Shown: positions 7,937 through 59,790 of the stretch, one piece after another
How the letters are laid out: each line of letters starts with the position of its first letter
How positions within the stretch are numbered: the stretch's first letter is position 1
Source: Octopus sinensis
Taxonomy: Eukaryota
Direction: 5' to 3'
DNA: 64,000 bases
NCBI RefSeq assembly: GCF_006345805.1
Contig: NC_042997.1
Span: forward strand, 148,242,001 to 148,306,000
The notes under the pieces: model-generated
Told to the model about the DNA's origin: nothing
The model's database searches: none
The model's input: the letters and a program-made list of their open reading frames with translations, nothing else
Program-made: the position numbers and the translations under genes

Positions 7937-9039
7937 GCATCTTTCAATTTCCGTCTACCAAATCCACTCAGAGGGCTTTATTCGATCCGGGGTTATAGAA
8001 GAATATGTTTGACTCAAATCTAAATGTCTATCTTATTAGAACAACATATGTTCCATACCCGTATCTTCTGATTTTCTAAAATGTACAAAATCAGAGTGAC
8101 AAGAATTAAAATAATTACGAATTTGCCGAAAATGAATAATACACGCAATCCTAAAACTAATATCGATATGTGCTACTTACCAAGGAAGAAGAAAGAAAAT
8201 GTTTGTTATTAAATACAGTAATCATTAGCATTGTGATAATGGGTCCCAAAATCTATGTCGTGCTTTTGCCTGTAGCCAGAAAATTTTAAAGTCATTGAAA
8301 AGTCAATAATAGTCAATAAAAGCCGGAAAAGTCAATAAAAGAAAGAAGCACGACAGGGCAATTTGAAGGCAGCTGATGCAAAAAAACAAAACCTGAGAAT
8401 TTTTGAAGTAACGAACACTAGTTGCGAATCACTCTTGGGATGCTGGAGCAAAAAAGTGAATCGCTAATTATAACTGCCCAGGAAACAGCCATTAAACTAC
8501 ATTGATATTGACAAAGACTGATAAAACTCAACCAGAGCACAAACGCAGAACGTGTGGAAAAACGACTCGGCAATGAAATATTTCTGAGGTGAATATTATA
8601 AGCCAGCACAAAAGTTTAAAGCAGCGCATATGATTATATCGGGAAAAATAAAACATTGGGATGTTAGCCGTGATTGTGGGATAAAAGTGAAATAGAAGGG
8701 GTATGAATGCGAGCCAAAGGCTCTGGTGAATGATAATTACAGAATTCTAGGGGATTATAACGACAGTTGGGAGAAATATACCATGTATGATGGTAAAGGA
8801 AAAAAAAAAGAAAGAAGAAAAATGTCATAAATCAAAAATTTTGCAGTGCCAAGGTCTCAAGCAATACACCTACTTATTGCCGCAGGCTTGTGTTCCTGAT
8901 TTGTTATTCATTTCGAGATGGGAAAGAAATAATAATTTTGAAATTAAAATAAATTTTGACGGCTTCAAAGGAAATTCGGTGAAGTACACCAAATAAATAT
9001 TTTATTAGCAATAGTTATGATTATATATATATATATATA

Positions 9040-13160: not shown

Positions 13161-13706
13161 CATCTTAGTCTTTATCATACTTTGCACAAATGTACCACAA
13201 AATTCCTAATATGATTTTCAACTAGAAATTTGTAACGGATCAATATCACGCCTATAAAAAATATATTTATCTATACATGTGCGGGTGTGCATGAAAACAG
13301 GCTTATTATGCGGGGGATAAGAATCAAACCTTATTTCCAATAAGGTTTTCTTTGACATACCGATATTAGTCTATATTATAGAAATACCTGTCTTAGCTCA
13401 CTTCTTTTCAAATTATTCAAATTATCTCGGTGATAAAAGTCTTCCACAATTTTTTGTACATTCTAACTCCTCCTCCATTTCGTGATTTCGGAGGACAAAA
13501 ATTGCTTTTAAACTTCTCAGTACTTTAAAATGCAGTCTGAAAAAAGAATAGAATCTCTACATTTTGCATGATCAAACATTCTAATTTAATTAGTAAAAAT
13601 TGTCAATTTTCTCCGTGAAATATCGTCGCGTCTAACTTCAAAACAGTCTTCGATTTCCGCGTATGACCACCCATTTTTGTCTGTGCGCGTATATATATAT
13701 ATATAT

Positions 13707-13774
13707 AACTATGATTGTCACACGCTGACGAGAGGTCAATACCTCGAAACTCGAGTCCGTGTGTATCATAAGTT
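13707..13774 (+). ncRNA. Type I hammerhead ribozyme, copy 1 (predicted cleavage after GUC, C13757)
   Basis: Stem I CACACG(13719-24)/CGUGUG(13758-63), extended by AUGAU/AUCAU and AACU/AGUU across an internal loop. Core CUGACGA(13725-31). Stem II GAGG-UCAAUA-CCUC. GAAA(13746-49). Stem III AC-UCGA-GU. C17. Confidence 0.93.
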
Positions 13775-14059
13775 GAAGACGGGAAGGATGACTTCCCTTT
13801 GCAAATACTGACAGGACACAGAAAGTGTGTCTATGGCCAGCTGGAGGAGTGTGTCCTCCTGGGGCTAAAAACTACAGTAGCATCCACCCTTAGGGGTTAG
13901 CCATATTGAAATGGCAAAAATACGTTACGATGTGTTACCGCTACTGTATATAACTCACTTTGATATTTATCATTGTTTGATTTCACTTTTTCAATATCAG
14001 CGACAGTGGACGCTGGAAAAAGTATAAGTATTTGTGAAGGAAATCTAATTCTCGCCGAC

Positions 14060-14127
14060 AACTATGATTGTCACACGCTGACGAGAGGTCAATACCTCGA
14101 AACTCGAGTCCGTGTGTATCATAAGTT
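14060..14127 (+). ncRNA. Type I hammerhead ribozyme, copy 2 (cleavage after 14110)
   Basis: Identical to copy 1. Confidence 0.93.
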
Positions 14128-14412
14128 GAAGACGGGAAGGATGACTTCCCTTTGCAAATACTGACAGGACACAGAAAGTGTGTCTATGGCCAGCTGGAGG
14201 AGTGTGTCCTCCTGGGGCTAAAAACTACAGTAGCATCCACCCTTAGGGGTTAGCCATATTGAAATGGCAAAAATACGTTACGATGTGTTACCGCTACTGT
14301 ATATAACTCACTTTGATATTTATCATTGTTTGATTTCACTTTTTCAATATCAGCGACAGTGGACGCTGGAAAAAGTATAAGTATTTGTGAAGGAAATCTA
14401 ATTCTCGCCGAC

Positions 14413-14480
14413 AACTATGATTGTCACACGCTGACGAGAGGTCAATACCTCGAAACTCGAGTCCGTGTGTATCATAAGTT
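14413..14480 (+). ncRNA. Type I hammerhead ribozyme, copy 3 (cleavage after 14463)
   Basis: Identical to copy 1. Confidence 0.93.
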
Positions 14481-14765
14481 GAAGACGGGAAGGATGACTT
14501 CCCTTTGCAAATACTGACAGGACACAGAAAGTGTGTCTATGGCCAGCTGGAGGAGTGTGTCCCCCTGGGGCTAAAAACTACGGTAGCATCCACCCTTAGG
14601 GGTTAGCCATATTGAAATGGCAAAAATACGTTACGATGTGTTACCGCTACTGTATATAACTCACTTTGATATTTATCATTGTTTGATTTCACTTTTTCAA
14701 TATCAGCGACAGTGGACGCTGGAAAAAGTATAAGTATTTGTGAAGGAAATCTAATTCTCGCCGAC

Positions 14766-14833
14766 AACTATGATTGTCACACGCTGACGAGAGGTCAATA
14801 CCTCGAAACTCGAGTCCGTGTGTATCATAAGTT
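14766..14833 (+). ncRNA. Type I hammerhead ribozyme, copy 4 (cleavage after 14816)
   Basis: Identical to copy 1. Confidence 0.93.
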
Positions 14834-15118
14834 GAAGACGGGAAGGATGACTTCCCTTTGCAAATACTGACAGGACACAGAAAGTGTGTCTATGGCCAGC
14901 TGGAGGAGTGTGTCCTCCTGGGGCTAAAAACTACAGTAGCATTCACCCTTAGGGGTTAGCCATATTGAAATGGCAAAAATACGTTACGATGTGTTACCGC
15001 TACTGTATATAACTCACTTTGATATTTATCATTGTTTGATTTCACTTTTTCAATATCAGCGACAGTGGACGCTGGAAAAAGTATAAGTATTTGTGAAGGA
15101 AATCTAATTCTCGCCGAC

Positions 15119-15186
15119 AACTATGATTGTCACACGCTGACGAGAGGTCAATACCTCGAAACTCGAGTCTGTGTGTATCATAAGTT
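15119..15186 (+). ncRNA. Type I hammerhead ribozyme, copy 5 (cleavage after 15169)
   Basis: Same fold; C>T at 15170 turns the first stem I pair into a G.U wobble. Confidence 0.9.
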
Positions 15187-15383
15187 GAAGACGGGAAGGA
15201 TGACTTCCCTTTGCAAATACTGACAGGACACAGAAAGTGTGTCTATGGCCCGCTGGAGGAGTGTGTTCTCCTGGGGCTAAAAACTACAGTAGCATCCACC
15301 TTTAGGGGTTAGCCATATTGAAATGGCAAAAATACGTTACGATGTGTTACCGCTACTGTATATAACTCACTTTGATATTTATC

Positions 15384-15418
<35 letters not shown>

Positions 15419-15420
<2 letters not shown>

Positions 15421-15619
15421 TATAATTAAGGGCTAAAGAGGGTTATTCTAAAGCCAAATACACTGTTTTATCCACTTATAATCCGCTTGTTACAGGAAAA
15501 TTGAAACTGAAAACGGGCAACTAACCTTTAGAAAATTTAAATTTCGTTATCTCTATATTGAATCAATTTCGGACTTAATCTTATAAAAAAAAAGATATAT
15601 TCCTTCTTCAGTAGAACTT

Positions 15620-15622: not shown

Positions 15623-15651
<29 letters not shown>

Positions 15652-15661
<10 letters not shown>

Positions 15662-15870
15662 TTAGAGACAAATCAAACAAATCAAACTTCAGTTTAAAAC
15701 TTGCAAAGAAGGTCTTGAAACCACCTGATGAATGTCAATAGAAGTGACAAGAAACGATCGTAGTGGATATCTTAATTATATTTAAATTATATAAATTTTT
15801 TTATGTATTGGATTAAGTCTTTCTTTGTTTGATTTGCATAATAGTGGTTTTTGTCTCTAATAATATTATA
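15652..15870 (+). mobile_element. 219-bp element with 21-bp terminal inverted repeats and an internal minimal hammerhead (Penelope-like terminus or MITE)
   Basis: tataatattattagagacaaa (15652-15672) and tttgtctctaataatattata (15850-15870) are exact reverse complements. The left end abuts (TA)n. Confidence 0.7.
15721..15766 (+). ncRNA. Minimal type I hammerhead-like motif (family 3)
   Basis: CCAC-CUGAUGA-A-UGUCA-AUAGAAG-UGACA-A-GAAA-C-GAUC-G-U-A|GUGG. Stem I CCAC/GUGG; palindromic ACGAUCGU stem III; GUA triplet; A.A mismatch at the base of stem II. Confidence 0.72.
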
Positions 15871-15872
15871 TT

Positions 15873-16258
15873 AAACAATGATAAATATCAAAGTGAGTTA
15901 TATACAGTAGCGGTAACACATCGTGACGTACTTTTGCCATTTCAATATGGCTCACCCCTAAGGGTGGATGCTACTGTAGTTTTTAGCCCCAGGAGGACAC
16001 ACTCCTCCAGCTGGCCATAGACACACTTTCTGTGTCCTGTCAGTATTTGCAAAGGGAAGTCATCCTTCCCGTCTTCAACTTATGATACACACGGACTCGA
16101 GTTTCGAGGTATTGACCTCTCGTCAGCGTGTGACAATCATAGTTGTCGCCGAAAGTGTGTCTACGGCCAGCTGGAGGAGTGTGTCCTCCTGGGGCTAAAA
16201 ACTACAGTAGCATCCACCCTTAGGGGTTAGCCATATTGAAATGGCAAAAGTACGTCAC
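15873..16258 (-). mobile_element. Inverted partial retrozyme monomer (15873-16148) with a 108-bp fold-back arm (16151-16258 mirrors 15923-16030)
   Basis: Reverse complement of the 353-bp unit. The arms match at 106/108 positions and share variants (aaaagtacgtcac) absent from the array (aaaaatacgttac). Confidence 0.92.
16077..16144 (-). ncRNA. Type I hammerhead ribozyme, copy 6 (minus strand; cleavage between 16094 and 16093)
   Basis: Exact reverse complement of the 68-nt motif at 13707-13774. Confidence 0.92.
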
Positions 16259-16352
16259 AATATTATATTATATTTTACTATAAAATTGGATTCAATCCTA
16301 AATCTGATTTTTCCCTGTAAATTTGGATTTATTCCCTAATATTCATTATTAT

Positions 16353-18924: not shown

Positions 18925-19298
18925 TTTATTCATGAATTTGTTTCAGTCATTTGACTGCGACCATGCTGGAACACAGCCTTTAGTCGAACAAATCGACCCC
19001 AGGACTTATTTTTTGTAAGCCTAATACTTATACTAACGTACTGATAAGTTACGGGGACGTAAACACACAAACATCAGTTGCCAAGCGATGATACGGGGGA
19101 CAAACATAAACACACAAACACACACACACACACATATGACGGACTTCCTTTAGTTTCCGTCTACCAAATCCACTCACAAGGCTTTGGTCAGCCCGAGGCT
19201 ATAGTAGAAGACACTTGCCAAAAGTGCCACGCAGTGGGACTGAACTCGGAACCATGTGATTGATAGGCAAGCTGCTTACCACACAGCCACTCCTGCGC
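18925..19298 (-). mobile_element. tRNA-derived SINE with internal (CA)n
   Basis: Minus-strand head gcgcaggagtggctgtgtggtaag (A box) ... gagttcagtccc (B box); body shared with 22942-23270 and 42805-43213. Confidence 0.85.
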
Positions 19299-22941: not shown

Positions 22942-23036
22942 CGTGGCACCTTGGGTAAGTGTCTTCTACTATAGCCTCGGGCCGACCAAAGCCTTGTGAG
23001 TAGATTTGGTAGATGGAAACTGAAAGAAACCCGTCG

Positions 23037-23071
<35 letters not shown>

Positions 23072-33729: not shown

Positions 33730-36316
33730 ATATTGGTTCACCCGCGAGGGGAGACCTACAACAATATATAATAACAGTGTGTAACAATTTAACTCCGTTT
33801 AAAGAAACCAAAACCCCAAAATAGCGAGCCAACTCTCCCCCACACTCTCTGCGCATGTCATTTATATTTTGGTACAGTCCATTAGGAGCCAACCAATAGG
33901 GCTGTTCTACGTCTACACAACACCGCCCCCTTTTGAGATTGGCTTTCTCCTTTACTTTATTCTTTTATTTCTATCATAATCCTATCTCTCTTGGCATTAA
34001 TTTCCGTCATTTCTGTATGTTTTCTTTTCTTGTTCGACCTACGTGTCGGTTCTGCTTTCACTTGTAGTTCTGGAACCTCGGACAGGTCATAACATATATC
34101 CATAGGCTCATTTCACCTTTCTTGATTTTTGGTATATCTTTTCTTTAATTGGTTAAGATGCCTTTTATGTTCATATTTTGATTCTTATACCATGTACATC
34201 GCATTACCCACACGTCCAGTTCCTGTCCTTTTACCTTGTTCCCAGTCCTTTTCTTCCCGTTTTTATACAATTTAAATTATACTTCGTTACCTGTGCTAAA
34301 AATTAATTCTACTTCCTGAATTTTGTATTTTCCGTTTCCTACTCAGCAGTAATTTGTCAAACACAGAACGAATATTTCTGGAGAACATCAAATCTGCGGG
34401 TGACCTACCCGGCTCTGCATTTGGATTCGGTGTTATTCTGTACATCTGTAAGAACTTGCCATATTTCTATCTTCAAAGGCTTCCCTTCTTGTCTTTCTTA
34501 AACCTCTCTTGAATGTATGGACGGATCTTTCTGCTAATCCATCTGACCATGGATGATATGGCAGAGTTAACACATGCTTCATCTGGACTGACTTACAGAA
34601 TTTTTCGAACTCCTTCGCCGTGAATTGTGTGCCACTATCTGACACGATCGTATCTGGCACTCCATAACGAGCGAACAATTCTTACAATATGTCAATAATC
34701 ATATTTGTGGTTGGCCTTGAACATTTACACACTTCAGGCCATTTGAAATAGCTGTCCACCTCGATAATATAATAAGAGCCATTTATTGGTTCTGCAAAAT
34801 TGACATGCAGTGTAGACCATGCTGAATACGTTTTTGACTGCGGCTGTATATGCACTGGGAGCGCCTTTGCTGCAATAGCGCATCCCTTGTATTGTTTTAC
34901 CAGTCTCTTAATTTGTCCATATACGGCCATTACACTAAATCCCTCATGGGCTCTTCATCCGGTCTATCCCCAGATGTCCCACATGGAAGCCTTTCAATAT
35001 TCTGTTTTGCAGTGCTTCAGGTATTACCACCTACTGTGCATATAATAATACATCATCACATACTGAATAATGCCTTGAACCTGCCTCCGTTCATTACATT
35101 ATTTTTCGTATTACTTCCGAACAGTATTTTTTAAAATCTTGTTTATGAATATATCTTTTTTTCCGATTTTAATTTAATTTCTTCTAGCGTTCCCGGCAAA
35201 TAACATACTACATTGTACAAAATGTTCTTCAATTCCATTTCTAGTTTTAACGATGCAATCACCATGTCTTCAAAAGGTTCCTTATATTTTGGAATTAGCC
35301 TAGACAACTCGTCTGCGTGTCCCATTTTCTTTAAAGGCAAAAACTCCATCTGAAAATCATAGTTCAAAAGGGTAGTCCCTCAGAGCTGTATGGAGGCGCA
35401 ATGGCCCAGTGGTTAGGGCAGCAGACTCGCGGTCATAGGATCGTGGTTTCGATTCCCAGACTGGGCGTTGTGAGTGTTTATTGAGCGAAAACACCTAAAG
35501 AAGCTCCACGAGGCTCCGGCAGGGGATGGTGGTGATCCCTGCTGTACTCTTTCATCACAACTTTCTCTCACTCTTACTTCCTGTTTCTGTTGTACCTGTA
35601 TTTCAAGGGGCCGGCCTTGTCACTCTCTGTGTCACGCTGAATATCCCCGAGAACTACGTTAAGGGTGCACGTGTCTGTGGAGTGCTCAGCCACTTACACG
35701 TTAATTTCACGAGCAGGCTGTTCCGTTGATTCGGATCAACCGGAACCCTCATCGTCGTAACCGACGGAGTGCTTCCAAGGTACTCCCTCAGAGCTGTAAG
35801 CGGTATGCTAACTGCGTGGGGATACCCTTTCTTGAACCAAAAATAGACAGTAACGGTTGGTGATCAGTTTGCAGCGTATACTGCCTACCATGTAGGAATT
35901 CATGGAATTTCTTTACTGCGAAGATTAATGATAAACTCTTCTTTTCGATCTGGCTGTAATTTTTTTCTGCTACTGATACATGTGCAATAGATTTGATATT
36001 ACCACCTTTAAATCTATGCAATATCATAGATCCTATACCATATTCACAGGCATCCGATACCACAATTATTTTCGAAATGAGTTAATGATAACTCTGATGT
36101 TAACCACTTTTTAAATTCCTCGAATGCCTTCTGACATTCATTTGTCCAGTCCCATTTGGTGTCTTTCTTTAACAAATTATTCAACGGAGCTTTTAGCTCA
36201 TATATTTTACGTATGTACAGCTGGTAATAACTTACCAAACCTAAAAATGCATGTAATGTTATTTTGTTAGTTGGAGCAGGCATGTTTATATTCTGTGACA
36301 GTTCATTAGTAGCCAA
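33730..36316 (-). mobile_element. pol: Decayed Ty3/Gypsy LTR retrotransposon: RT C-terminus, RNase H, integrase, PPT and probable 3' LTR
   Basis: Minus-strand fragments: AFLGLVSYY..LKAPLNNLLKKDTKWDW (RT/connection); VSDACEYGIG..KNYSQIEK..VKKFH..TDHQPL (RNase H); KWPEV..FARYGVPDTIVSDSGTQF..PYHPWSDGLAERSV (integrase downstream of RNase H, Gypsy order). PPT caaaagggggcgg immediately precedes TGTTG at 33922. Confidence 0.88.
35391..35778 (+). mobile_element. Young full-length tRNA-derived SINE inserted in Gypsy pol, with a 15-20-bp TSD
   Basis: A box tggcccagtggttag, B box gtttcgattcc. TSD tccctcagagctgta at 35376-35390 and 35784-35798 (20 bp with one mismatch). 3' stem-loops gttccgttgat-tcgg-atcaaccggaac and cgtcg-taac-cgacg. 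Confidence 0.93.
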
Positions 36317-37611
36317 CTTCTACACAACAGTTATAAAGTACCACATCGCACATCTACAAAAACTAAAGATAAGTAATATAAATCACATCTTTGTTCAACT
36401 TCACGGACTAAGTAAATTTCATTCCTGATGAATTTCAAAAATTAGCGACCAGATAATTGATTAAAAGAATTCGTAACGCACGCATAAGAATGAATAAACG
36501 CTTGAACATAATTGATATGTGTTGTTTTCGACGATAAATGTACACTTACACGATTAACTGATTTGCATGATTTCAAATTGGACGTACAAGGTTTTGATGA
36601 TACTTCGAATACAACACCACACAGTGTAACATGTTTGGATCTTTGAATTTGGTATACAATGCAACCATCGGTCACCGTGCAACCAAATTTACTCACAAGG
36701 ACTGAATTGTCCAAAGGCAGTAGTATAAAACGCAATCTCACTTGTTCGTTCCTTTCCGTTACCACTCCTGTTAGCGGATCCATAATACCTACCCTTGCAC
36801 ATCGATGTTAAGGTACTACTTCACCTACACTGATTATATATATTTGTCAGTCTAGACGAAGATTGTTGGATCAAATCACCACAAAACTGGGGCATTCGTC
36901 TCAGTAATGACATCTACGTTGCATGCTTTTACACTTTGCACTTCTCTCCACCGGACGACATACCGTTCTATCTACACGTACACAGTGATTAGAAGTCTCA
37001 GGACTGCAAGTGGAAGAATAACTTATTTAAAATATTCAAACATTCACTTATCACGCATCGAGCCACTAGTCACTTTTATCTAAAACGCCTATCATCACAC
37101 CACACACGCATGGCATAATCAAATGCATCTAGATCATTTTCCCCAAGCAATCAAATATATATTCAAGAGAATACATCATTTGGATGTTTATACCGTTTTC
37201 AGCCAGGCTTATATACGCAGCATCACCATGCACAGAATAAAATACTCGTACGTATATTATTACCGCATGCTCATATAGACTCACATAACATGACATTCAT
37301 CCATGATCTTACATTGCATCTACGTTCATATTAGATACATACATACAATCATACATACAATACACATCCATAACTACAAATCTCAGACAAAGTAAGCCGC
37401 AACAAAGTGAAAACAATTTAAACACGCACCGCAATAAAATGCACGTGCGTATATATACAACATTAAATCTCCCACATTCTAATCACAGCTAACTCACACA
37501 TTCGCAGAAGCAAGCTATCCTTGCACACATTCATACGCACATTTACATGCAATCGTACATACACCCACACTCACACTTCAGAGTAACGCATCAATACGTT
37601 GTAATACTAAT

Positions 37612-38042
37612 ACTGTCCCTACGAAGCACACATGAACATTGAACACCCATACCTACTAGTCCTTTTAAACAATGTTCAGCGTTCGAACATGATCACTAGC
37701 CCATTTATATTATGTTCACCGTTCTCACATGGACACTAGTCCCTTTACGGCATGTTCACCGTTTGCACATGAACGCTAGTCCCTTTATAGTACGTTCACC
37801 GCTCACATAAGAACCCTATTCCCTTTATAGTAAGTACACTGTTTGAACATGAACACTAGTCCATTTATAGTATGTTCACCGTTCCCACATGACCACTAGT
37901 CCATTCATAGAATGTTCCATGTTCGCACATGAACATTAGTCCCTTTATACTATGTTCACTATTCGCACATGAACACTAGTCCCGAAGCACACATGAATAG
38001 CAATACCTACTAATTCCTTTATAGTATGTTCACCGTTCATAC
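37612..38042. repeat. 40-bp minisatellite (~10 diverged units; consensus acatgaacactagtccctttatagtatgttcaccgttcgc)
   Basis: acat anchors at 37687, 37727 and 37767 show the 40-bp period. Confidence 0.92.
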
Positions 38043-42385: not shown

Positions 42386-42503
42386 GTTTACGGCCTTATC
42401 ACGTTGAAAGCACCTAGTCTCGTTCGATCACCGAAGTTAAGCAACGTCGAGACTAGTTAGTACGAAGATGTGTGACCGCTTGGGAAACCTAGGTGTTGTA
42501 AGC
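42386..42503 (+). rRNA. Full-length 5S rRNA copy, most likely a retroposed pseudogene or 5S-derived SINE
   Basis: gtttacggccttatcacgttgaaagcacc...cgatcaccgaagttaagcaacgtcg...gttagtac...gtgaccgcttgggaa...ggtgttgtaagc matches invertebrate 5S over ~118 nt with box A and box C. Flanked by the direct repeat ggcatatactatcg (42370-42383, 42545-42558). Confidence 0.88.
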
Positions 42504-42804
42504 GTTACACATTGTTTTAGCCCTTTGTGGGTAGTAAAGAAATAGGCATATACTATCGATGTGAATTGTAAGTTCTTTCTCCAAGACACGATAAATTACA
42601 ATCCTAATTCTTTGAAATGAAATGAAATTTACCATGCTGGCTTTTATGCTGCCTCTACATCCGAAGTACATTTACAATTTTAAAAGAACAAAAGAATTAC
42701 TCCAAATGCCATATAGTGGAATAGAACCTGAGTCATGATAATTGCGAAGAATTGTGCATACAAACAAGTATATATATAATTATGGGTGGAAATCGCAGGA
42801 TTAC

Positions 42805-43213
42805 TCTTTCCTTTTTACTCTTTTATTTGTTTCAGCCATTTGACTGCGGCCATGCTGGAGCACCGCTTTTAGTCAAGCAAATCGACCCCGGGACTTATTC
42901 TTTGTAATCCCAGTACTTATTCTATCGGTATCTTTTGCCGAACCGCTAAGTGACGGCGACGTAGACACACCAGCATCGGTTGTCAAGCAATGCTAGGGGT
43001 ACAAACACAGACACACAAACACATACATAATATACATATATACATATACACGACAGGCTTCTTTCAGTTTCCGTCTACCAAATCCACTCACAAGGCATTG
43101 ATCGGTCCGGGGCTATAGCAGAAGACACTTGCCCAAGATACCACGCAGTGGGATTGAACCCGGAACCATGTGGTTGGTTAGCAAGCTACTTACCCCGCAG
43201 CCACTCCTGCGCC
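42805..43213 (-). mobile_element. Full-length tRNA-derived SINE (same family as 18925-19298)
   Basis: Head aggcgcaggagtggctgcggggtaag...gggttcaatccc; colinear body. Confidence 0.88.
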
Positions 43214-44039
43214 TATATAGATTGCTATATCTATATTCAGTTTCAAATAGTTAATATATATGTAGATATAGTCATAGTCTGCAATTTTTATAATACTTCA
43301 GCTCAATACGTTAAATGGTTTTTGACACAGATAAATCGACGGATTAAATGGAATCTGAGGAACGCATGGAAAACAATGAGAATGGATAAATGTGACAGAA
43401 GGTATAACAATAAATGGATACACAGAAATATAGAATCTCGGAAAGAATGGGTCATAAAAGAGATGAGAAAATAAGAGGACAGATAAATGGCGAGGTAGAG
43501 GCAGCGAGAGTGTGAGAAAATTAGGGAGAGAGAACATAAATGACTGCAAATGGAAAGTAAATTGTTAATCAGAACTAGCTGCCAACGGACAAAACCAGAA
43601 TAATATTTACTAAGTATTTTCATAATATTCTCATTAAACAATGGAAAAGGAAGTAAAATAATAGTAAAAAAAATACTAATAATGAAAGGGAAAATACAGA
43701 CAAGATCCGTAAGCGATCAAATACATTAATGGGAGAAGAGTTTTCATATTCTCTACATATTTGTATTTATCCAGAATGTGTAGATAAGTAATATATCTTT
43801 AGACAGTAAATTGGAACAGATATTAAAGGCAAGATCGTATGAAAACCTTAAGCTGATATAGAATGATATATGATCGGAGTTTCCAGTGGCTTACAAATAA
43901 AAGATCAAGCGAGTTTGCGAATCGGTTCCCAAATATAATATCGACTATGCATGCATATTGATGTGCTCACATCTCTAGAACAAAGGCGGACACAAGAGTT
44001 GAAAAGATATATTTTGGTTTGTCATAATTTCATAAATGA

Positions 44040-48523: not shown

Positions 48524-49608
48524 TCAGTCATTCTTGGGTTGTTGCTTGGTTTACATCAGCATTTTACAGTATATATTGTCCACGCAGAGGCTTCTTGTTC
48601 CACTGCTCCTCAATTTGTTTCTGCCCGTTCATTTTGTCCAGTCTGCTTGATCCATTTTGCTTGTTTTGTGACAGTGTTTTCAGGTTCCTCATCTAATTCA
48701 GGGTTAGTGCCAAGTTTCCTTGCGAATTTGCAAGCTTCCTTGACAATAGAATGTGATTCTTTGCTGCACACAAGCCGCAGCATCCAGTCCTCTGTACTAG
48801 ATACGTACTTATTCATTGCTATTGTGGAGGTCTTATAGCACGGTTCTACCTGCATTATTCTACTTGCCCCATTGCTCTCCTTAGGTACAAACGATCAATG
48901 TCTGCTTTTGGCTGGTGCATGTTCTTAGATACTAGTAGATTATTGTCTTCTTGTTCAGGCGTTGGAGCTCTGTAAGATTTTAGAAAATGATATTGAAACT
49001 ATATCGGACTACTGGAAGTGCCAGAGTGCTAATGGCTTCGATGCAATTTTTGGAGTCGAGTTCAGTTTTTAGTCTGAGTTTTATTCTCATGTAATACTCC
49101 TTTCTTGTTTTTTTTTTCCGCCATAGTAGCATGTTGTATACCATCTCCTTCGCTTATCCCCAGGTATTTATAACGTTCTTCTGGGCCAGACTCCTTCATG
49201 GTAGCGTCGGTCTCTAATTTAATGGAAGCTGTTTGCCTAAGCTTGCCTGATATAAAAGTTGCTTTAGCATAATTTTCAAGGCCAAAATCCATCCCGATGC
49301 CATTGCTGAAATCTTTAACAGTTGTTAGCAGCCCTACTAGCTTTTTGTTATTTTTAGAAAACAGCTTCAGATCGTTCATATAAAACATACCTAGGGCATG
49401 TTTTATAAACGTTGAAACCACACCTGGTGATATTCAGTTTGCTTGAATGTAGGATCAGTGCCATGCAAAAGAGTAATGAGGAGAGGGAAACACGGGCAAA
49501 GATGCCTCGTTTCATGTTGATGTTGTTAGATTGGCTCAATCCATTACGATGGTTTAGAAGATGTGAGTTCTACTTCACCATGATACCTTGCAAGAATTTG
49601 GAGACGAC
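48524..49608 (-). mobile_element. Decayed R4/Dong-like RLE non-LTR retrotransposon fragment (divergent subfamily, internally deleted)
   Basis: RGIF..SLSSLLFCMAL, FYMNDLKLFSKN, YKYLGISEGDGIQH, HQPKADIDRLYL, KPLRGQY; ends at (TAA)n at 49609. Confidence 0.8.
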
Positions 49609-49651
49609 ATTATTATTATTATCATTATTATTATTATTATGATTATTATTA

Positions 49652-49706
<55 letters not shown>

Positions 49707-49707
<1 letters not shown>

Positions 49708-49875
49708 TATGTTTGACTTTTCCTTTATGTCTGTACAAGTTGGCTCCAAGTCTCACCCAGAGACAACAGGTTGGAAGTTCACGTTGTTGTTATGCCTAGT
49801 GTGCCATATATTTGGGTTTTTTTGGGGGGGCGTTGTACTTGTGAATGTCTAATAAATAAATTTTAAAAAGAAGTT
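49707..49875 (-). mobile_element. Probable 3'-end stub of another non-LTR subfamily between two (TAA)n tracts
   Basis: Non-repetitive ~170-bp island in the array, with 3'UTR-like composition ending ...aaagtcaaacatag-aataataa. No coding match. Confidence 0.45.
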
Positions 49876-49892
49876 TGTTATTATTATTATTA

Positions 49893-49963
<71 letters not shown>

Positions 49964-49995
49964 TAATATTACTATTATTATTATTATTATTATTG

Positions 49996-52900
49996 TTCAG
50001 TAGTTTTATTTTTATAGCGTGCTTTCACTTCACTACCGAGCGCAGCTCTGTGTGCCTTGGGTATGTGCTGTGATGCTCTGATGGTTATTGTATGGAAAGT
50101 GTTCTGTGTAGGATGTGTGCAGTGCCTAGTAGTGCAATTTTCTGTATGTTATATGTGTTTGTAAGTCCTGGTGTTTTTGTTATGTATTTGTCTGAATATT
50201 TTTTTATCATGCCTAATGCACCTACTATGATAGGAATTGTTTCTGTTTTCAGGTTCCACATTCTAGTTACCTCTATTTCCAGGTCTTTGTATTTTGAGAG
50301 TTTCTCCATTTCTTTTAGAGACACGTTGTCATCTGCCGGTATTGATACATCAATTAGAAAGCATTTTTTTTCTTCATGATCTCTGACAACTATATCTGGT
50401 CTGTTGGCCTTAATTTCTCTATCTGTGTGTATCGGCATATCCCAGAGTATGGTTGCTTTCTCGTTTTCTGTGACCTTTTCTGGTGTGTGCCTATACCATC
50501 TTTTTTCTGTTGTTATTCCATAATGTTGGCATAGCTTCCAATGTATGTAGGTTCCAACGCTGTCATGTCTGTGAATATATTCCTTCTTAGCCAGGACTGG
50601 GCAGCTAGAGATAATATGATTTATTGTTTCTTGTCCATCTCCACATATTCTGCAGTTACTTGTAATATTTCTTTTCATTACATGTTTTTGGTAATTTCTG
50701 GTGGGGAGGCTTTGGTCTTGTGCTGCAATTAAAAATCCCTCTGTTTCTGCTTTGAGTCCTGAGCTTCTCAACCATTACTGGGATTTTTCTTTGTCTATTT
50801 CTTTTGCGTTTAGTTTAGTCCAGTATTTACCATGAAGGGGCTTTTCTTGCCATCGTTTTATCATGGCTCGTTGCTGTTGTATTTTTAGTTTGGATTTCAT
50901 TTGTTTTATAGCTTTTGTTGTTTCTTCATCATCTTCTTCTTCTTCTTTGTGTTTATTAGGTGGTATGATTTCTTGTTTGTATTTGTCAGCTTCCTTAAAT
51001 ACTGAGAACAGTTTTTTGTTTTGCTCGTGTTTTGCCGCTATCTGGATCAGTTTTCCTTCCCTCTGAAGTAGGTATTTTTGCAGTCCTATGGTGGTTATTT
51101 TATAGTAGTTTTCCAGCTGTATAAGGCCTCTACCACCTTCTATACGTTGTATATATAGTCTTTCTATGTCAGATTTTGGGTGATGCATCCTAGATCCTGT
51201 CATTATTTTTCTTGTTTTCCTGTCTATTTTGGTCAGTTCATTTCGTGTCCAGTTAAGGATATTGTAGCTGTAACTTATAACTGGGACAGCTAAAGTGTTG
51301 ATACCTATTATCTTGTTTTTAGCATTGAGCTCTGTGTTTAGTATTGATCTAACTCGTCTATAATATTCTTTTTTATTTTCTCTTTCATTTGTGTGTGTTG
51401 TGTCTTATCTAGTTCATGGATTCCTAAGTATTTGTAAGTTTGGCTTTGGTCTAATTCTTTTATTTCATTTGCTTCATCTAGTGTGATGTTGTTACTCTTA
51501 ACTAGTTTTCCTCTTTTCATGGTTACTTTGGCGCATTTTTCTAATCCAAATTTCATATCTATTTCTTTGGTAAATCCATGAACTGTCTTTAATAGTGTTT
51601 CCAGCTGTTTGTCATTTGCAGCGTATAGTTTTAGGTCATCCATATATAAAAGGTGGCTGATCGTTTTGCCGTAACATTTATATCCGCATCCAGTTCTATT
51701 TAGCATATCAGATAGAGGTGACAGTGCCAAGCAGAAAAGGAGTGGAGAGAGCGTATCTCCCTGGAATATTCCTCTTCTAATGGGGATGTCTTTGGTTTTC
51801 ATGAGTCCCTCTTTTGTTTGGAGGTGTAGGACTGTTTGCCATTTATTCATAGAGTGCTCTATGAATTTTATGATTGTTGGTGCTACTTTGTTAATGGCTA
51901 GTGTTTCGAGGATCCATGTGTGGGGGATGCTATCAAACGCCTTTTTGTAGTCAATCCAGGCCATACTGAGGCCTTTCTTCTTTCTGTGGCTGTCTTCAGT
52001 TACGGCTTTATTAATCATTAGTTGATCTTTACAGCCATATGAGCCTTTGCGGCATCCTTTCTGCTCTTCTGGGAACAGTTTGTTTTCGTCCAGGTGCTTG
52101 TTCAGCCTTTGCGATATCACTGCAGTAAATGCCTTGAACATTGTAGGGAGGCAGGTTATTGGTCTGTAGTTTTCTGGTTTTGTTGTTTCATTTGATTTGG
52201 GAATTAAGATGGTTTTCCCCTTCGTGAGCCATTCAGGCATTGTCTCTGGCTCTGCTAGTATGCTGTTAAAGTTTTCAGCCAGCTTTATGTGCATTCCTGT
52301 TAGATATTTCAACCAGAAGTTGGGGATCTTGTCATACCTAGGTGCCTTCCAGTTGCTTAGTTTTTGCAGTGCCTGGGTGACCTCTTCAGTTGTTATGGGG
52401 GTCCAAAGTTGTTCAGATGCCGATTTTGTTATTTTCATACTCCTTCTTTTTGGCTGTTCGTTCGCCAACCATATTTTTCTCCAGAATTCTTCCAATTCTT
52501 CTGCCGTTGGTGCTGCAGTGACTTCTATTTTATTTTTGCCCAGTTCTTGGTAGAACTTTTTGGGGTCGGAGTTGAACTTTTTGTTCTGTTCAAAGAAGCG
52601 TTGGCGTTTCTCGTACCGGTGGATCCTTTGAGCTTTGGCAAGGATATCTTGCTTCAGCTTTTCTTTTATCTCCGGCAAATCTTTTTCTGTGATGTTATAT
52701 TTGCGGAGCATTTTTGTTCTCTTTTTGTTGCTCAGTAGCGTTGCTTGTTTGCTGATTTCATTAAGAATCAACAGGTCTTTTCTAATTTTTTTTATTTTGT
52801 TTTGGATGTTATTTATCCACAGGGTTTGTTTGGGTGGTGGTACTCCTGTTTGGGCGGGTTTGGGTGAGTATCCAGCTTCTTTTGTGGCTGCAGTGGCTGC

Positions 52901-53975
52901 TGCGTATATCAAGTCATTTAGTTCAGTGATATCACTTTTTTTTGTTTCAGTGGCTAGTTCAGTGACGGCTAGGTTTATGTTGTTTATAATTGGTGTTGTT
53001 ATTGCGTTTATTTTTATTCTTGGGAGGTATGGTCGGTGGTCCATTTTGGGCTCTGTGGTTTTCAGTTCTTTGATTATTTTATTTTTTATATTATCATAAT
53101 CATTAGGCTCCCCTTCGTTGTTTACATCGTGTTTGTTGGGAATGTTGCGTTTGTCTTCGTGTTTTACAGTTTCAGTGTTTATATTATTGGGCATTGTTGT
53201 GTGGCTTCTATCTACATTTTCCTGGTGTATGTTTTCTTTTAGGTGTTCTATTTCTATTTCTGATATTTTTTTTGTGTTGAGAATGTATCTTCGTACGTTA
53301 GCTAATTTATTAGGGTTCATTGCTGTATCCAAGTCTATATCTCTATTATTTTTCTTCCATATTTTATATGTATGTGTTGTTGTATTTTCATTTTTTGGGT
53401 AGAGTACTGCTGTGAAGTATGCGTGTAAGATAGAAATGTATTCCTCACGTGTCCATTTACGTCTTTTGGGTTTTATTTGCGGGACATGAGGTACAACGTC
53501 CGGCCCATTATTTTGACGGTCGTCATTTTCGTAGGGTACCGGTCCGTTTATTTCTGTTGTCACATTATTTCGCACGTGTAGTTTTTCGTACATTTTTTGT
53601 TGTAGGTTTAATGTACGTACCGCTCGATTGTTATTCTTGAGTTGAATAGTATCGGTGGCCTTTAATTTCTTCGTAGTTCCTTTGTACATGGTGTTTGAGG
53701 TCGGGGATGATCGTGTTGTTCCACGCATGTTTACATGTGTTGTGTTAGAGGTGGAGATAATATCGAGTCAAAATACATCATTTCGTTTCGAAAATAGTAA
53801 TAAATTTCAATTAGTATTACTTACTCGGATATAGTCCAATTCTTTGTTAGTAAATCTTTGGCTCCATAGGGTGTCCTTATTTTCGATGTTTGTGGATAGA
53901 TTTCGGAGCTCTGTATTTTCCTTCTTACATCTTAAAATCCCCGGTGTTCTCTTTCTTAAAATCCCCGGTGTTCTC
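49996..53975 (-). mobile_element. Near full-length R4/Dong-clade non-LTR retrotransposon (element A), flanked by (TAA)n
   Basis: Single long RT-RLE reading frame plus a 3'UTR ending ...gctataaaaataaaactactgaa before (TAA)n. The 5' limit is uncertain between ~53760 and 53975. Confidence 0.93.
50085..53728 (-). pseudogene. RT plus restriction-like endonuclease ORF (~1214 aa reconstructed) with one frameshift (~51370) and one nonsense codon (50775-50777)
   Basis: Myb-like KRRKWTREE; ENYRPITCL; [13 protein letters not shown]; RGIFQGDTLSPLLF; YMDDL; CRICG..ETINHIISSC (CCHC); RHD; NRPDIVV...LIDVSIP..KYKDL (RLE). Restoring 1 T in the run at ~51369-51374 (7 T in sibling D) gives 3645 nt = 1215 codons. 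Confidence 0.93.
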
Positions 53976-54546: not shown

Positions 54547-54593
<47 letters not shown>

Positions 54594-54598
<5 letters not shown>

Positions 54599-55977
54599 TA
54601 GTTTTATTTTTATAGCGTGCTTTCACTTCACTACCGAGCGCAGCTCTGTGTGCCTTGGGTATGTGTTGTGATTTGTTACGATGCTCTGATGGTTATTGTA
54701 TGGAAAGTGTTCTGTGTAGGATGTGTGCAGTGCATAGTAGTGCAATTTTCTGTATGTTATATGTGTTTGTAAGTCCTGGTGTTTTTGTTATGTATTTGTC
54801 TGAATATTTTTTTATCATGCCTAATGCACCCACTATGATAGGAATTGTTTCTGTTTTCAGATTCCACATTCTGGTTACCTCTATTTCCAGGTCTTTGTAT
54901 TTTGAGAGTTTCTCCATTTCTTTTAGAGACACATTGTCATCTGCCGGTATTGATACATCAATTAGAAATCATTTTTTTTCTTCATGATCTCTGACAACTA
55001 TATCTGGTCTGTTGGCCTTAATTTCTCTATCTGTGTGTATCGGCATATCCCAGAGTATGGTTGCTTTCTCGTTTTCTGTGACCTTTTCTGTTGTGTGCCT
55101 ATACCATCTTTTTTCTGTTGTTATTCCATAATGTTGGCACAGCTTCCAATGTATGTAGGTTCCAACTCTGTCATGTCTGTGAATATATTCCTTCTTAGCC
55201 AGGACTGGGCAGCTAGAGATAATATGATTTATTGTTTCTTGTCCGTCCCACATATTCTGCAGTTACTTGTAATATTTCTTTTCATTACATGTTTTTGGTA
55301 ATTTCTGGTGGGGAGGCTTTGGTCTTGTGCTGCAATTAAAAATCCCTCTGTTTCTGCTTTGAGTCCTGAGCTTCTCAACCATTGCTGGGATTTTTCTTTG
55401 TCTATTTCTTTTGCGTTTAGTTTAGTCCAGTATTTACCATGAAGGGGCTTTTCTTGCCATCGTTTTATCATGGTTCGTTGCTGTTCTATTTTTAGTTTGG
55501 ATTTCATTTGTTTTATAGCTTTTGTTGTTTCTTCTTCTTCTTCTTCTTCTTCTTCTTCTTCTTCTTCTTCTTCTTCTTCTTCTTCTTCTTCTTCTTCTTC
55601 TTCTTCTTCTTCTTCTTCTTCTTCTTCTTCTTCTTCTTCTTCTTCTTGTTCTTCTTGTTCTTCTTGTTCTTCTTGTTCTTCTTGTTCTTCTTGTTCTTCT
55701 TGTTCTTCTTCTTGTTCTTGTTCTTGTTCTTGTTCTTGTTCTTGTTCTTCTTCTTGTTCTTCTTCTTCTTTTTCTTCTTCTTCTTCTTCTTCTTCTTCTT
55801 CTTCTTCTTCTTCTTCTTCTTCTTCATATTTATTAGGTGGTATGATTTCTTGTTTGTCAGCTTCCTTAATTACTGAGAACAGTTTTTTTCGCTCGTGTTT
55901 TGCCGCTATTTGTATCAGTTTTCCTTCCTTCTGAAGTAGATATTTTTATAGTCCTATGGTGGTTATTTTATAGTAGT
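54594..55977 (-). mobile_element. Element C: 5'-truncated copy of the A subfamily with an in-frame (GAA/CAA)n expansion at 55529-55825
   Basis: Near-identical to A 49996-51108 apart from the expanded repeat and small indels. Confidence 0.92.
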
Positions 55978-56695: not shown

Positions 56696-56766
<71 letters not shown>

Positions 56767-56771
<5 letters not shown>

Positions 56772-56953
56772 TAGTTTTATTTTTATAGCGTGCTTTCACT
56801 TCACTACCGAGCGCAGCTCTGTGTGCCTTGGGTATGTGCTGTGATTTGTTGTGATGCTCTGATGGTTATTGTATGGAAAGTTTTCTGCGTAGGATGTGTG
56901 CAGTGCCTAGTAGTGCAATTTTCTACTAGGCACTGCACACATCCTACGCAGAA
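56767..56953 (-). mobile_element. Element F: ~160-bp 3' stub ending in a 31-bp fold-back palindrome
   Basis: 56883-56913 and 56923-56953 are perfect reverse complements with a 9-nt loop. Confidence 0.9.
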
Positions 56954-56977
56954 TTATTTTTATTATTATTATTATTA

Positions 56978-59790
<2,813 letters not shown>

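What the first reader, a model, noticed from the sequence alone, without database searches (positions are those of the whole stretch)
13707..15386. Tandem 353-bp satellite is a hammerhead-ribozyme retrozyme: five self-cleaving units in one array
Seen: every 353-bp unit contains the complete hammerhead consensus. Stem I CACACG/CGUGUG is extended through an internal loop (AUGAU/AUCAU, AACU/AGUU); the core is CUGACGA; stem II is GAGG-UCAAUA-CCUC; then GAAA; stem III is AC-UCGA-GU; the triplet is GUC. Predicted cuts are after 13757, 14110, 14463, 14816 and 15169. The rest of the unit is studded with hairpins (gggaag/cttccc, gacac/gtgtc, ggagg/cctcc, tacagtagc/gctactgta, gccat/atggc, cagcg/cgctg). 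Several unit SNPs keep pairing as G.U wobbles (15170, 14582). The 63-aa repeated ORF is incidental. Established: tandem type I hammerhead satellites (newt satellite 2, Schistosoma Sm-alpha, cricket pDo500, metazoan non-LTR retrozymes) are transcribed, self-cleave to monomers, can circularise, and are thought to be mobilised by Penelope-like RTs. Inference: this is an active or recent ~353-nt circular-RNA-producing retrozyme family. I cannot tell whether it is already described for this lineage.
Basis: partly seen in the sequence, partly recalled or inferred. Interest (0 to 1): 0.95.

Follow-up and report, generated by a model that had tools for sequence, protein, structure and literature searches.

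The report
Hammerhead-ribozyme retrozyme tandem array
A 353-bp tandem repeat in this animal genome carries a complete self-cleaving hammerhead ribozyme in every unit, so it is a real and apparently young example of a "retrozyme", a class of small circular-RNA-producing mobile elements already well described in animals.

Summary
Window 13707-15386 holds 4.76 copies of a 353-bp unit, with 7 differences in 1,680 bp. Each of the five unit starts carries a complete canonical metazoan type I hammerhead: helix I 6 bp with an internal loop and distal extension, CUGACGA, helix II 4 bp with loop UCAAUA, GAAA, helix III AC-UCGA-GU, and GUC. Rfam Hammerhead_1 scores 32.2 bits, just under its cut-off of 34, with E about 1e-5 locally.

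It is joined head-to-head to a 5'-truncated fragment at 16151-16261. All insertions sit in (TA)n or AT-rich DNA.

The unit is non-coding, has 42% GC and lacks LTR, PBS and PPT. As a circle it folds far better than shuffles (z = -6.5). Only one polarity has a ribozyme. These features match the non-LTR retrozymes of Cervera and de la Peña (2020).

The partial tandem, the inverted truncated copy and the (TA)n target resemble Penelope-like-element insertions. I found no matching sequence in the papers or collections I could search, and the host is unidentified.

Verdict: a new member of a known kind, of moderate-low interest. Self-cleavage, circular RNA and mobility remain untested.

The parts
13690..13706 (.). 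(TA)n microsatellite directly abutting the 5' end of the array
   Evidence: Sequence read; it forms an inverted-repeat pair with the right-hand (TA)n.
13707..15386 (+). Tandem array of 4.76 units of 353 bp (a retrozyme multimer). It starts at unit position 1 and ends at unit position 268.
   Evidence: TRF; unit-by-unit comparison.
13707..13774 (+). Hammerhead 1 with its extended helix I (core 13719-13763). Predicted cut after C13757.
   Evidence: Rfam RF00163 at 32.2 bits; descriptor; helix check.
14060..14127 (+). Hammerhead 2 (core 14072-14116). Predicted cut after 14110.
14413..14480 (+). Hammerhead 3 (core 14425-14469). Predicted cut after 14463.
14766..14833 (+). Hammerhead 4 (core 14778-14822). 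Predicted cut after 14816.
15119..15186 (+). Hammerhead 5 (core 15131-15175). Predicted cut after 15169. A C-to-U change at position 1.1 (15170) turns the first helix I pair into G.U.
   Evidence: Rfam at 28.9 bits.
15386..15424 (.). (TA)19 microsatellite directly abutting the 3' end of the array
15651..15871 (+). A 221-nt imperfect hairpin element with a 22-bp perfect terminal inverted repeat. It holds a hammerhead-like motif at 15721-15766: helix I 4 bp, helix II 5 bp plus an A.A at its base, a palindromic helix III ACGAUCGU, and a GUA triplet. Whether it belongs to the system is uncertain.
   Evidence: No Rfam hit; the local fold is unremarkable.
15870..16152 (-). Inverted partial unit (unit positions 346-353 plus 1-275, about 98% identical) with an intact hammerhead at 16088-16132. 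The predicted cut is 3' of the C at 16094 on the minus strand.
16151..16261 (+). A 5'- and 3'-truncated fragment (unit positions 114-225) joined head-to-head to the inverted copy. It shares two variants with that copy (A214G, T220C) that the array lacks.

Best explanation
This is a young insertion of a non-autonomous non-LTR retrozyme.

Proposed mechanism, with each step inferred from the family unless marked otherwise:
1. The + strand of the array is transcribed as a multimer.
2. Each 353-nt repeat folds a canonical type I hammerhead and cuts itself after GUC. The fold is either a single motif or, because helix III is only 2 bp and ACUCGAGU is a palindrome, a double hammerhead formed by two neighbouring motifs.
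3. The products are 353-nt linear monomers with 5'-OH and 2',3'-cyclic phosphate ends.
4. A host RtcB-type tRNA ligase closes them into compact, highly base-paired circles.
5. A circle or multimer is copied by rolling-circle, target-primed reverse transcription, using the RT and endonuclease of an autonomous element. A Penelope-like element that prefers (TA)n is the most likely donor. This gives new partial tandem arrays that start and stop at arbitrary unit positions, and sometimes inverted 5'-truncated copies.

Shown here: the motif, the array, its non-coding nature, the predicted fold and the insertion anatomy. Not shown here: transcription, cleavage, ligation and reverse transcription.
For: - All core nucleotides and three helices match the canonical metazoan architecture: helix I 6 bp, helix II 4 bp, and helix III 1-2 bp with a small palindromic loop (definition in PMC4209133).
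- Loop 2 (UCAAUA) aligns with the AAUA of the Rfam consensus loop.
- All five array motifs and the inverted copy have an intact core.
- The unit is 353 bp with 42% GC, has no PBS or PPT, and has no ORF longer than 66 codons (stop to stop).
- No frame of the unit has a protein homologue.
- The circular monomer folds at -116.9 kcal/mol against -81.3 +/- 5.5 for shuffles, z = -6.45.
- Only the + polarity has a ribozyme of any Rfam family at E <= 10.
- Two hammerhead segments co-fold at -45.7 against 2 x -20.5 kcal/mol, with an 8-bp intermolecular helix III. A 1.2-mer forms the same pairing.
- The array is a non-integer tandem (4.76 units) bounded by (TA)n on both sides. A second insertion has a head-to-head inverted 5'-truncated copy and AT-rich ends.
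- Partial tandems, inverted 5'-truncated copies and (TA)n targets are the described signature of Penelope-like-element insertion (PMC8557442).
- The retrozyme class, its circular RNAs and RtcB ligation are documented in PMC7229834. The link to Penelope-like elements is argued in 10.64898/2026.07.22.740005.
Against: - The Rfam score is 1.8 bits under the curated gathering score.
- As an isolated 68-mer, the catalytic secondary structure (-13.7 kcal/mol) is not the minimum-free-energy fold (-20.5 kcal/mol).
- The copies are too similar to test conservation or covariation.
- No copy was found outside this 2.6-kb locus, in the rest of the window or in any collection I could search. Dispersal is therefore not shown.
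- ORFs of at least 45 codons between about 8 and 21 kb of the window, some 5-6 kb either side of the locus, show no RT or GIY-YIG domain. The only RTs in the window belong to a LINE and an LTR-element relic.
- No target-site duplication can be read inside a microsatellite.
- A T5 run at unit positions 281-285 would stop Pol III, and no promoter was identified.
Confidence: 0.85

Rival explanations
1. This is a silent satellite relic. The repeat once derived from a hammerhead-bearing element, but here it was amplified by unequal crossing-over or replication slippage. It is not transcribed or mobilised now.
For: Only one locus was seen. No promoter was found. Homogeneous units are also what concerted evolution of a satellite produces. 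Expression cannot be tested with these tools.
Against: The core is intact in all six copies. The nearby inverted copy and the head-to-head fragment carry their own shared variants. The array has a non-integer copy number and (TA)n boundaries. These points fit insertion events better than slippage. At 0.4% divergence the array has had little time to fall silent.
Confidence: 0.1
2. The array is the pseudo-LTR region of an autonomous or decayed Penelope-like element, not a free-standing non-autonomous element.
For: Penelope-like elements carry type I hammerheads in tandemly arranged terminal repeats. They insert as partial tandems with inverted copies, often into (TA)n (PMC8557442; PMC4209133).
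Against: No RVT or GIY-YIG domain was found in any ORF of at least 45 codons between about 8 and 21 kb of the window. Five consecutive 353-bp units leave no room for an ORF. The hammerhead is the canonical form (helix I 6 bp, helix II 4 bp, loop 2 AAUA), not the minimal Penelope-like-element form with a long helix II and short helix I.
Confidence: 0.04
3. This is a chance hammerhead-like match in an ordinary tandem repeat, or an integrated copy of a viroid-like or delta-like RNA replicon.
For: The Rfam score is below the gathering threshold.
Against: Scaling the window E-value in proportion to sequence length gives about 2e-6 for one 353-bp unit (my arithmetic). Shuffled windows give 0.07 descriptor hits. 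Replicons of that kind need a ribozyme in both polarities or an ORF, and neither is present.
Confidence: 0.01

Closest known systems
Mytilus galloprovincialis non-LTR retrozyme (construct Mg353; Cervera and de la Peña 2020, PMC7229834)
   Same: Both are tandem repeats of about 350-390 bp; the cloned mussel unit is also 353 nt. Both have a type I hammerhead in every unit and a helix III of the form AC-NNNN-GU that makes a palindromic 8-mer. Both are AT-rich, non-coding, and predicted to form a highly self-paired circle.
   Different: There is no sequence similarity outside the catalytic core (supplement read). The mussel hammerhead (CUGAUGA GUCU-UUUGU-AGAC) lacks most of the conserved loop nucleotides. 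The present one has a loop 2 ending AAUA like the canonical consensus, plus a 3-nt/1-nt internal loop after 6 bp of helix I.
Schistosoma Sm-alpha hammerhead (the basis of the Rfam Hammerhead_1 consensus)
   Same: Helix I is 6 bp followed by an asymmetric internal loop. Helix II is 4 bp capped by a 6-nt loop ending AAUA. Helix III is short and the cleavage triplet is GUC (alignment). The detail of the Sm-alpha helix I loop is from my own knowledge, not tested here.
   Different: Sm-alpha is described as a SINE-like dispersed and tandem repeat of another length and sequence. N7 here is C rather than U.
Newt satellite 2 and axolotl Rtz_331 / Rtz_353
   Same: These are tandem units of 330-350 bp transcribed into monomers, multimers and circles. 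A weak helix III with a palindromic tetraloop lets them act as double hammerheads (PMC7229834).
   Different: They are vertebrate families present at about 1e5 copies. HHR_Amex1 has a 1-bp helix III and HHR_Amex2 has a U.U at the base of helix II. The motif here has a 2-bp helix III and an intact G10.1-C11.1 pair, which the paper associates with better single-motif cleavage in invertebrates.
Minimal hammerheads in the pseudo-LTRs of Penelope-like elements (PMC4209133; PMC8557442)
   Same: They share type I topology, a palindromic helix III and tandem arrangement. Their insertions are partial tandems with inverted 5'-truncated copies, often in (TA)n.
   Different: Penelope-like-element motifs have a long helix II (6-8 bp), a short helix I (4-5 bp) and no loop-loop contacts, and they flank an RT-EN ORF. 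None of that holds for the 353-bp unit. The separate motif at 15721-15766 does have that architecture but lacks the G10.1-C11.1 pair.

Membership tests
Hammerhead ribozyme, type I (Rfam RF00163) | Catalytic core C3 U4 G5 A6 N7 G8 A9 ... G12 A13 A14 ... A15.1-U16.1, H17 | tested here: met
   CUGACGA / GAA / A..U / C is present in all six copies.
Hammerhead ribozyme, type I (Rfam RF00163) | Three helices around the core, with helix I open-ended and helices II and III closed by loops | tested here: met
   Helix I is 6 bp plus an extension. Helix II is 4 bp with a 6-nt loop. Helix III is 2 bp with a 4-nt loop.
Hammerhead ribozyme, type I (Rfam RF00163) | Score at or above Rfam's curated gathering score | tested here: inconclusive
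   The score is 32.2 bits against 34. E is 1.2e-5 in 1.9 kb and 4.2e-4 in 64 kb, with a full-length match to model positions 1-45. The cut-off is a curation device, not a property of the ribozyme.
Hammerhead ribozyme, type I (Rfam RF00163) | Loop 1 - loop 2 tertiary contacts | not testable with these tools
   Only a resemblance can be reported: loop 2 UCAAUA against the consensus CAAAUA, and an internal loop after 6 bp of helix I.
Hammerhead ribozyme, type I (Rfam RF00163) | Mg2+-dependent self-cleavage 3' of H17 | not testable with these tools
   This needs in vitro transcription.
Metazoan non-LTR retrozyme (PMC7229834; 10.64898/2026.07.22.740005) | Type I hammerhead in every unit of a tandem repeat of about 150-450 bp | tested here: met
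   The unit is 353 bp, and all five unit starts have the motif.
Metazoan non-LTR retrozyme (PMC7229834; 10.64898/2026.07.22.740005) | No LTRs, PBS or PPT; GC below 50% | tested here: met
   There is no tRNA-Met PBS, and no purine or pyrimidine run of 10 or more. GC is 42%.
Metazoan non-LTR retrozyme (PMC7229834; 10.64898/2026.07.22.740005) | Non-coding | tested here: met
   The longest open frame is 66 codons and the unit length is not a multiple of 3. The exact product is not on record, and no frame has a homologue.
Metazoan non-LTR retrozyme (PMC7229834; 10.64898/2026.07.22.740005) | Monomer predicted to form a highly self-paired circle | tested here: met
   63% of bases are paired. The energy is -116.9 kcal/mol, z = -6.45 against 200 dinucleotide shuffles.
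Metazoan non-LTR retrozyme (PMC7229834; 10.64898/2026.07.22.740005) | Many dispersed genomic loci (mobility) | tested here: inconclusive
   Two adjacent insertions with distinct variants lie in one 2.6-kb locus. There are no others in the window. The source genome is not available.
Metazoan non-LTR retrozyme (PMC7229834; 10.64898/2026.07.22.740005) | Expressed as linear and circular monomer RNA | not testable with these tools
   No transcriptome of the host is at hand.
Metazoan non-LTR retrozyme (PMC7229834; 10.64898/2026.07.22.740005) | Co-occurrence with autonomous Penelope-like elements in the same genome | not testable with these tools
   None lies between about 8 and 21 kb of the window. 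Nothing can be said about the rest of the genome.
Penelope-like element (pseudo-LTR) | Repeat flanks an RT plus GIY-YIG ORF | tested here: not met
   No RVT or GIY-YIG domain is present in ORFs of at least 45 codons between about 8 and 21 kb of the window.
Viroid-like / delta-like circular RNA replicon | Ribozymes in both polarities, or an encoded protein | tested here: not met
   Hits are on the + polarity only at E <= 10. No ORF has homologues.

The most novel reading that the evidence does not exclude
The locus may preserve the integration footprint of a retrozyme with unusual clarity. That footprint has three parts: a non-integer multimer dropped into a (TA)n microsatellite, a second insertion with a head-to-head inverted 5'-truncated copy, and between them a 221-nt hairpin element with a Penelope-type minimal hammerhead-like motif. 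If the same anatomy recurs genome-wide, it would be direct structural evidence that retrozyme circles are integrated by the GIY-YIG/RT machinery of (TA)n-targeting Penelope-like elements. It would also come from a lineage, possibly a cephalopod mollusc, where I found no description of retrozymes.
Probability: 0.2. Interest if true: 0.5.

Novelty: new member of a known kind. Interest (0 to 1): 0.3.

Why it matters
It adds one more family, apparently recently amplified, to the known non-LTR retrozymes. Its near-identical units and intact canonical hammerhead make it a convenient substrate for cleavage and circularisation assays. The insertion anatomy ((TA)n target, partial tandem, inverted truncated copy) bears on a question that is still only inferred: which autonomous element mobilises animal retrozymes. 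It does not open a new category, because tandem type I hammerhead repeats are already reported across most animal phyla.

Tried and rejected
1. Finding family members elsewhere.
   - The exact hammerhead was scanned in viral contigs and metagenome contigs, with 0 hits.
   - A looser pattern gave 12 metagenome loci and 0 in genome contigs. The 12 share only the ribozyme core with the unit.
   - Exact look-up of the 63-aa ORF found nothing on record.
   - Translations of all frames of the unit gave no hit.
   - A covariation or conservation test across copies was therefore impossible.
2. Identifying the host.
   - The LINE RT ORF has at best 46% identity to anonymous metagenome proteins.
   - SINE-like and unassigned ORFs gave no hit.
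   - Sequence strings of the hammerhead and the SINE appear in no relevant paper; the one paper that holds a 13-nt string is unrelated.
   - From memory only, the SINE next to the microsatellites and the 5S sequence look molluscan or octopod. This is a lead, not a result.
3. SNPs as structure evidence: rejected. The 5 of 7 that keep a pair are no better than the 53% expected for transitions.
4. Pol III promoter: there is no B box, the A-box matches are weak, and a T5 run lies inside the unit.
5. The second hammerhead-like motif at 15721-15766 is kept only as a side observation. It has no Rfam hit, an A.A where G10.1-C11.1 is expected, and a local fold no better than shuffles.
It was redone with ORF segments.

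Full report
**What is there**

Tandem Repeats Finder reports one array at 13707-15386 with period 353, 4.8 copies, 99% matches and no indels. Cutting it into units shows that units 1 and 2 are identical. Units 3, 4 and 5 differ from the consensus at 2, 1 and 4 positions, so there are 7 differences in 1,680 bp. The unit has 42% GC in a window of 34% GC.

**The ribozyme**

Each unit begins with AACUAUGAUUGUCACACG CUGACGA GAGG UCAAUA CCUC GAA AC UCGA GU C CGUGUG U AUCAU A AGUU.
- All invariant hammerhead nucleotides are present: CUGANGA, GAA, the A15.1-U16.1 pair, and H17 = C.
- Helix I has 6 bp next to the core, then a UGU/U internal loop and 9 more pairs.
- Helix II has 4 bp with a G10.1-C11.1 base pair and a 6-nt loop.
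- Helix III has 2 bp with a 4-nt loop.

This is the architecture that Cervera and de la Peña give for canonical metazoan hammerheads: helix I 6 bp, helix II 4 bp, and helix III 1-2 bp with a small palindromic loop (PMC4209133).

Rfam's Hammerhead_1 model matches all five copies end to end. Four score 32.2 bits and the fifth scores 28.9 bits. The fifth carries a C-to-U change at position 1.1, which turns a G-C pair into G.U. The scores lie just under the gathering score of 34, so the default scan is silent. E is 1.2e-5 in the local search and 4.2e-4 for the whole window. Scaled in proportion to sequence length, that is about 2e-6 for one 353-bp unit.

A descriptor I wrote (core plus three helices) finds exactly these copies, the inverted copy, and one further motif. 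It finds 0.07 hits per shuffled window. The predicted cleavage positions 13757, 14110, 14463, 14816 and 15169 are correct. They would release four full 353-nt monomers.

BLAST of the consensus against the window, and the inverted-repeat search, show two further pieces:
- a minus-strand copy at 15870-16152 (unit positions 346-353 plus 1-275) with an intact hammerhead at 16088-16132;
- a + strand fragment at 16151-16261 (unit positions 114-225), joined to it head-to-head.

These two pieces share two variants (A214G, T220C) that the array lacks. They therefore come from a separate event or template. No other copy lies in the 64 kb.

**The rest of the unit**

- No open frame exceeds 66 codons, and 353 is not a multiple of 3.
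- The exact 63-aa product is not on record.
- A query made of every frame of the unit finds no homologue among 5.8 billion proteins.
- There is no tRNA-primer binding site and no polypurine tract.
- Folded as a circle, the monomer reaches -116.9 kcal/mol against -81.3 +/- 5.5 for 200 dinucleotide shuffles (z = -6.45), with 63% of bases paired. Helix I of the ribozyme continues into the main stem.
- At E <= 10 no other ribozyme family matches, and nothing matches the minus polarity of the array.

**Variation and structure**

There are 12 variant sites among all copies, and 7 fall at paired positions. Five of these keep a pair, all as G.U, and two break one. Random transitions at paired positions would keep 53%, so this is not evidence. 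The copies are simply too young to test conservation or covariation.

**Single or double hammerhead**

For the isolated 68-mer, the catalytic secondary structure scores -13.7 kcal/mol, while the minimum-free-energy fold scores -20.5 kcal/mol. Two such segments co-fold at -45.7 kcal/mol. They form both helices I and II plus an 8-bp intermolecular helix III from the palindrome ACUCGAGU. A 1.2-mer of the repeat makes the same pairing.

The literature reports that invertebrate motifs with a 2-bp helix III cleave as monomers at 0.1-0.8 per minute. It also reports that amphibian motifs need dimers (PMC7229834). Both routes are therefore open here.

**Insertion anatomy**

- The array starts at unit position 1 directly after (TA)n and ends at unit position 268 directly before (TA)19.
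- The inverted copy ends at about unit position 275 against AT-rich sequence. The fragment also ends against AT-rich sequence.
- Arkhipova and colleagues describe Penelope-like-element insertions as partial tandems, often with an inverted 5'-truncated copy. They note a strong bias for microsatellites, (TA)n in Naiad elements, which hides target-site duplications (PMC8557442).
- The locus matches that description. That is circumstantial support for the proposed Penelope-like mobilisation of animal retrozymes (PMC7229834; 10.64898/2026.07.22.740005).
- The array itself is not part of such an element. ORFs of at least 45 codons between about 8 and 21 kb of the window have no RT or GIY-YIG domain. 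The RTs in the window belong to a LINE at 49-59 kb and an LTR-element relic at 34.4-36.3 kb.

**Most likely mechanism**

The steps below are inferred from the family, not shown here.
1. The multimer is transcribed. The polymerase is unknown, and a T5 run inside the unit argues against Pol III.
2. The hammerhead cuts after GUC.
3. The monomers carry 5'-OH and 2',3'-cyclic phosphate ends.
4. An RtcB-type ligase circularises them.
5. A borrowed RT-EN carries out rolling-circle, target-primed reverse transcription into (TA)n.

**Comparison with what is known**

The class is established. It includes newt satellite 2, Schistosoma Sm-alpha, cricket pDo500, and the non-LTR retrozymes of corals, mussels, axolotl and many other invertebrates (PMC7229834). 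The cloned mussel unit is also 353 nt, but it shares only the catalytic core with this one.

I found this sequence in no paper and in no collection open to me. The giant squid genome paper lists 235 Hammerhead_1 hits without further study (PMC6962438).

The host could not be identified with the tools. From memory only, the SINE-like repeat and the 5S sequence suggest a mollusc, perhaps an octopod. That is a lead, not a finding.

**Verdict**

It is a new member of a known kind. Interest is moderate-low, because a specialist would expect such arrays in an invertebrate genome. The parts worth a further look are the clean insertion anatomy and the neighbouring hammerhead-like hairpin element.

Noticed in passing
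window 15651-15871 (motif 15721-15766, + strand): A 221-nt imperfect hairpin with a 22-bp perfect terminal inverted repeat folds at z = -5.9. It lies between the two retrozyme insertions and holds a second, different hammerhead-like motif: CCAC CUGAUGA AUGUCA-AUAGAAG-UGACAA GAA AC-GAUC-GU A GUGG. The short helix I, long helix II and palindromic helix III resemble Penelope-type minimal hammerheads. However, it has A.A where G10.1-C11.1 is expected, and it has no Rfam hit. My descriptor expects 0.07 such motifs per shuffled window. It could be a small retrozyme-like or MITE-like element, or chance.
   Followed up: partly
window 42386-42504 (+): A full-length 5S rRNA match scores 75.9 bits (E 2.8e-14). 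It is a lone copy in AT-rich, microsatellite-rich surroundings. Whether it is a functional gene, a variant or a 5S-derived repeat was not examined.
   Followed up: no
window 43050-43216, 19138-19298, 22942-23037 (-), 7937-8003: A roughly 165-bp SINE-like repeat (85-88% identity between copies) sits next to TA/CA microsatellites each time. ARAGORN finds no tRNA in the window. From memory it resembles an abundant octopus SINE, but this could not be tested.
   Followed up: partly
window 49000-53800, 54547-55554, 56955-59022: These are three copies or fragments (97% identical) of one non-LTR retrotransposon (RVT_1 plus zf-RVT; the longest ORF is 796 aa at 51338-53728, minus strand). They are interleaved with long (TTA)n and (TTC)n runs. 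The best protein relatives are only 46% identical.
   Followed up: partly
window 34436-36319 (-): A decayed LTR-retrotransposon pol region. Integrase core and RT-RNase H domains are spread over several short frames.
   Followed up: partly
whole window: Microsatellite density is very high. Perfect runs of 12 bp or more cover 6.4% of the 64 kb, mostly (AT)n, (AAT)n, (AC)n, (AGAT)n and (AAG)n. CpG observed/expected is 0.76.
   Followed up: partly
window 37655-37983: A 40-bp tandem repeat with 8.2 copies and 77% matches. Its nature is unknown.
   Followed up: no
window 56881-56956 (+): A sub-threshold mir-92 match (32.5 bits, gathering score 47) lies inside the 217-bp repeat at 56736-57141. It is probably just a hairpin. 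Many other miRNA 'hits' in the window are microsatellite artefacts.
   Followed up: no
L006 593-628; L002 185-223; L005 1078-1116 (metagenome contigs): The loose pattern scan picked up unrelated environmental contigs with complete-looking hammerheads that share the helix II GAGG/CCUC, for example L006 ACACAG CUGAAGA GAGG-CAAUAA-CCUC GAAAC GC GUC CUGUGU. They have no similarity to the rest of the 353-bp unit.
   Followed up: partly
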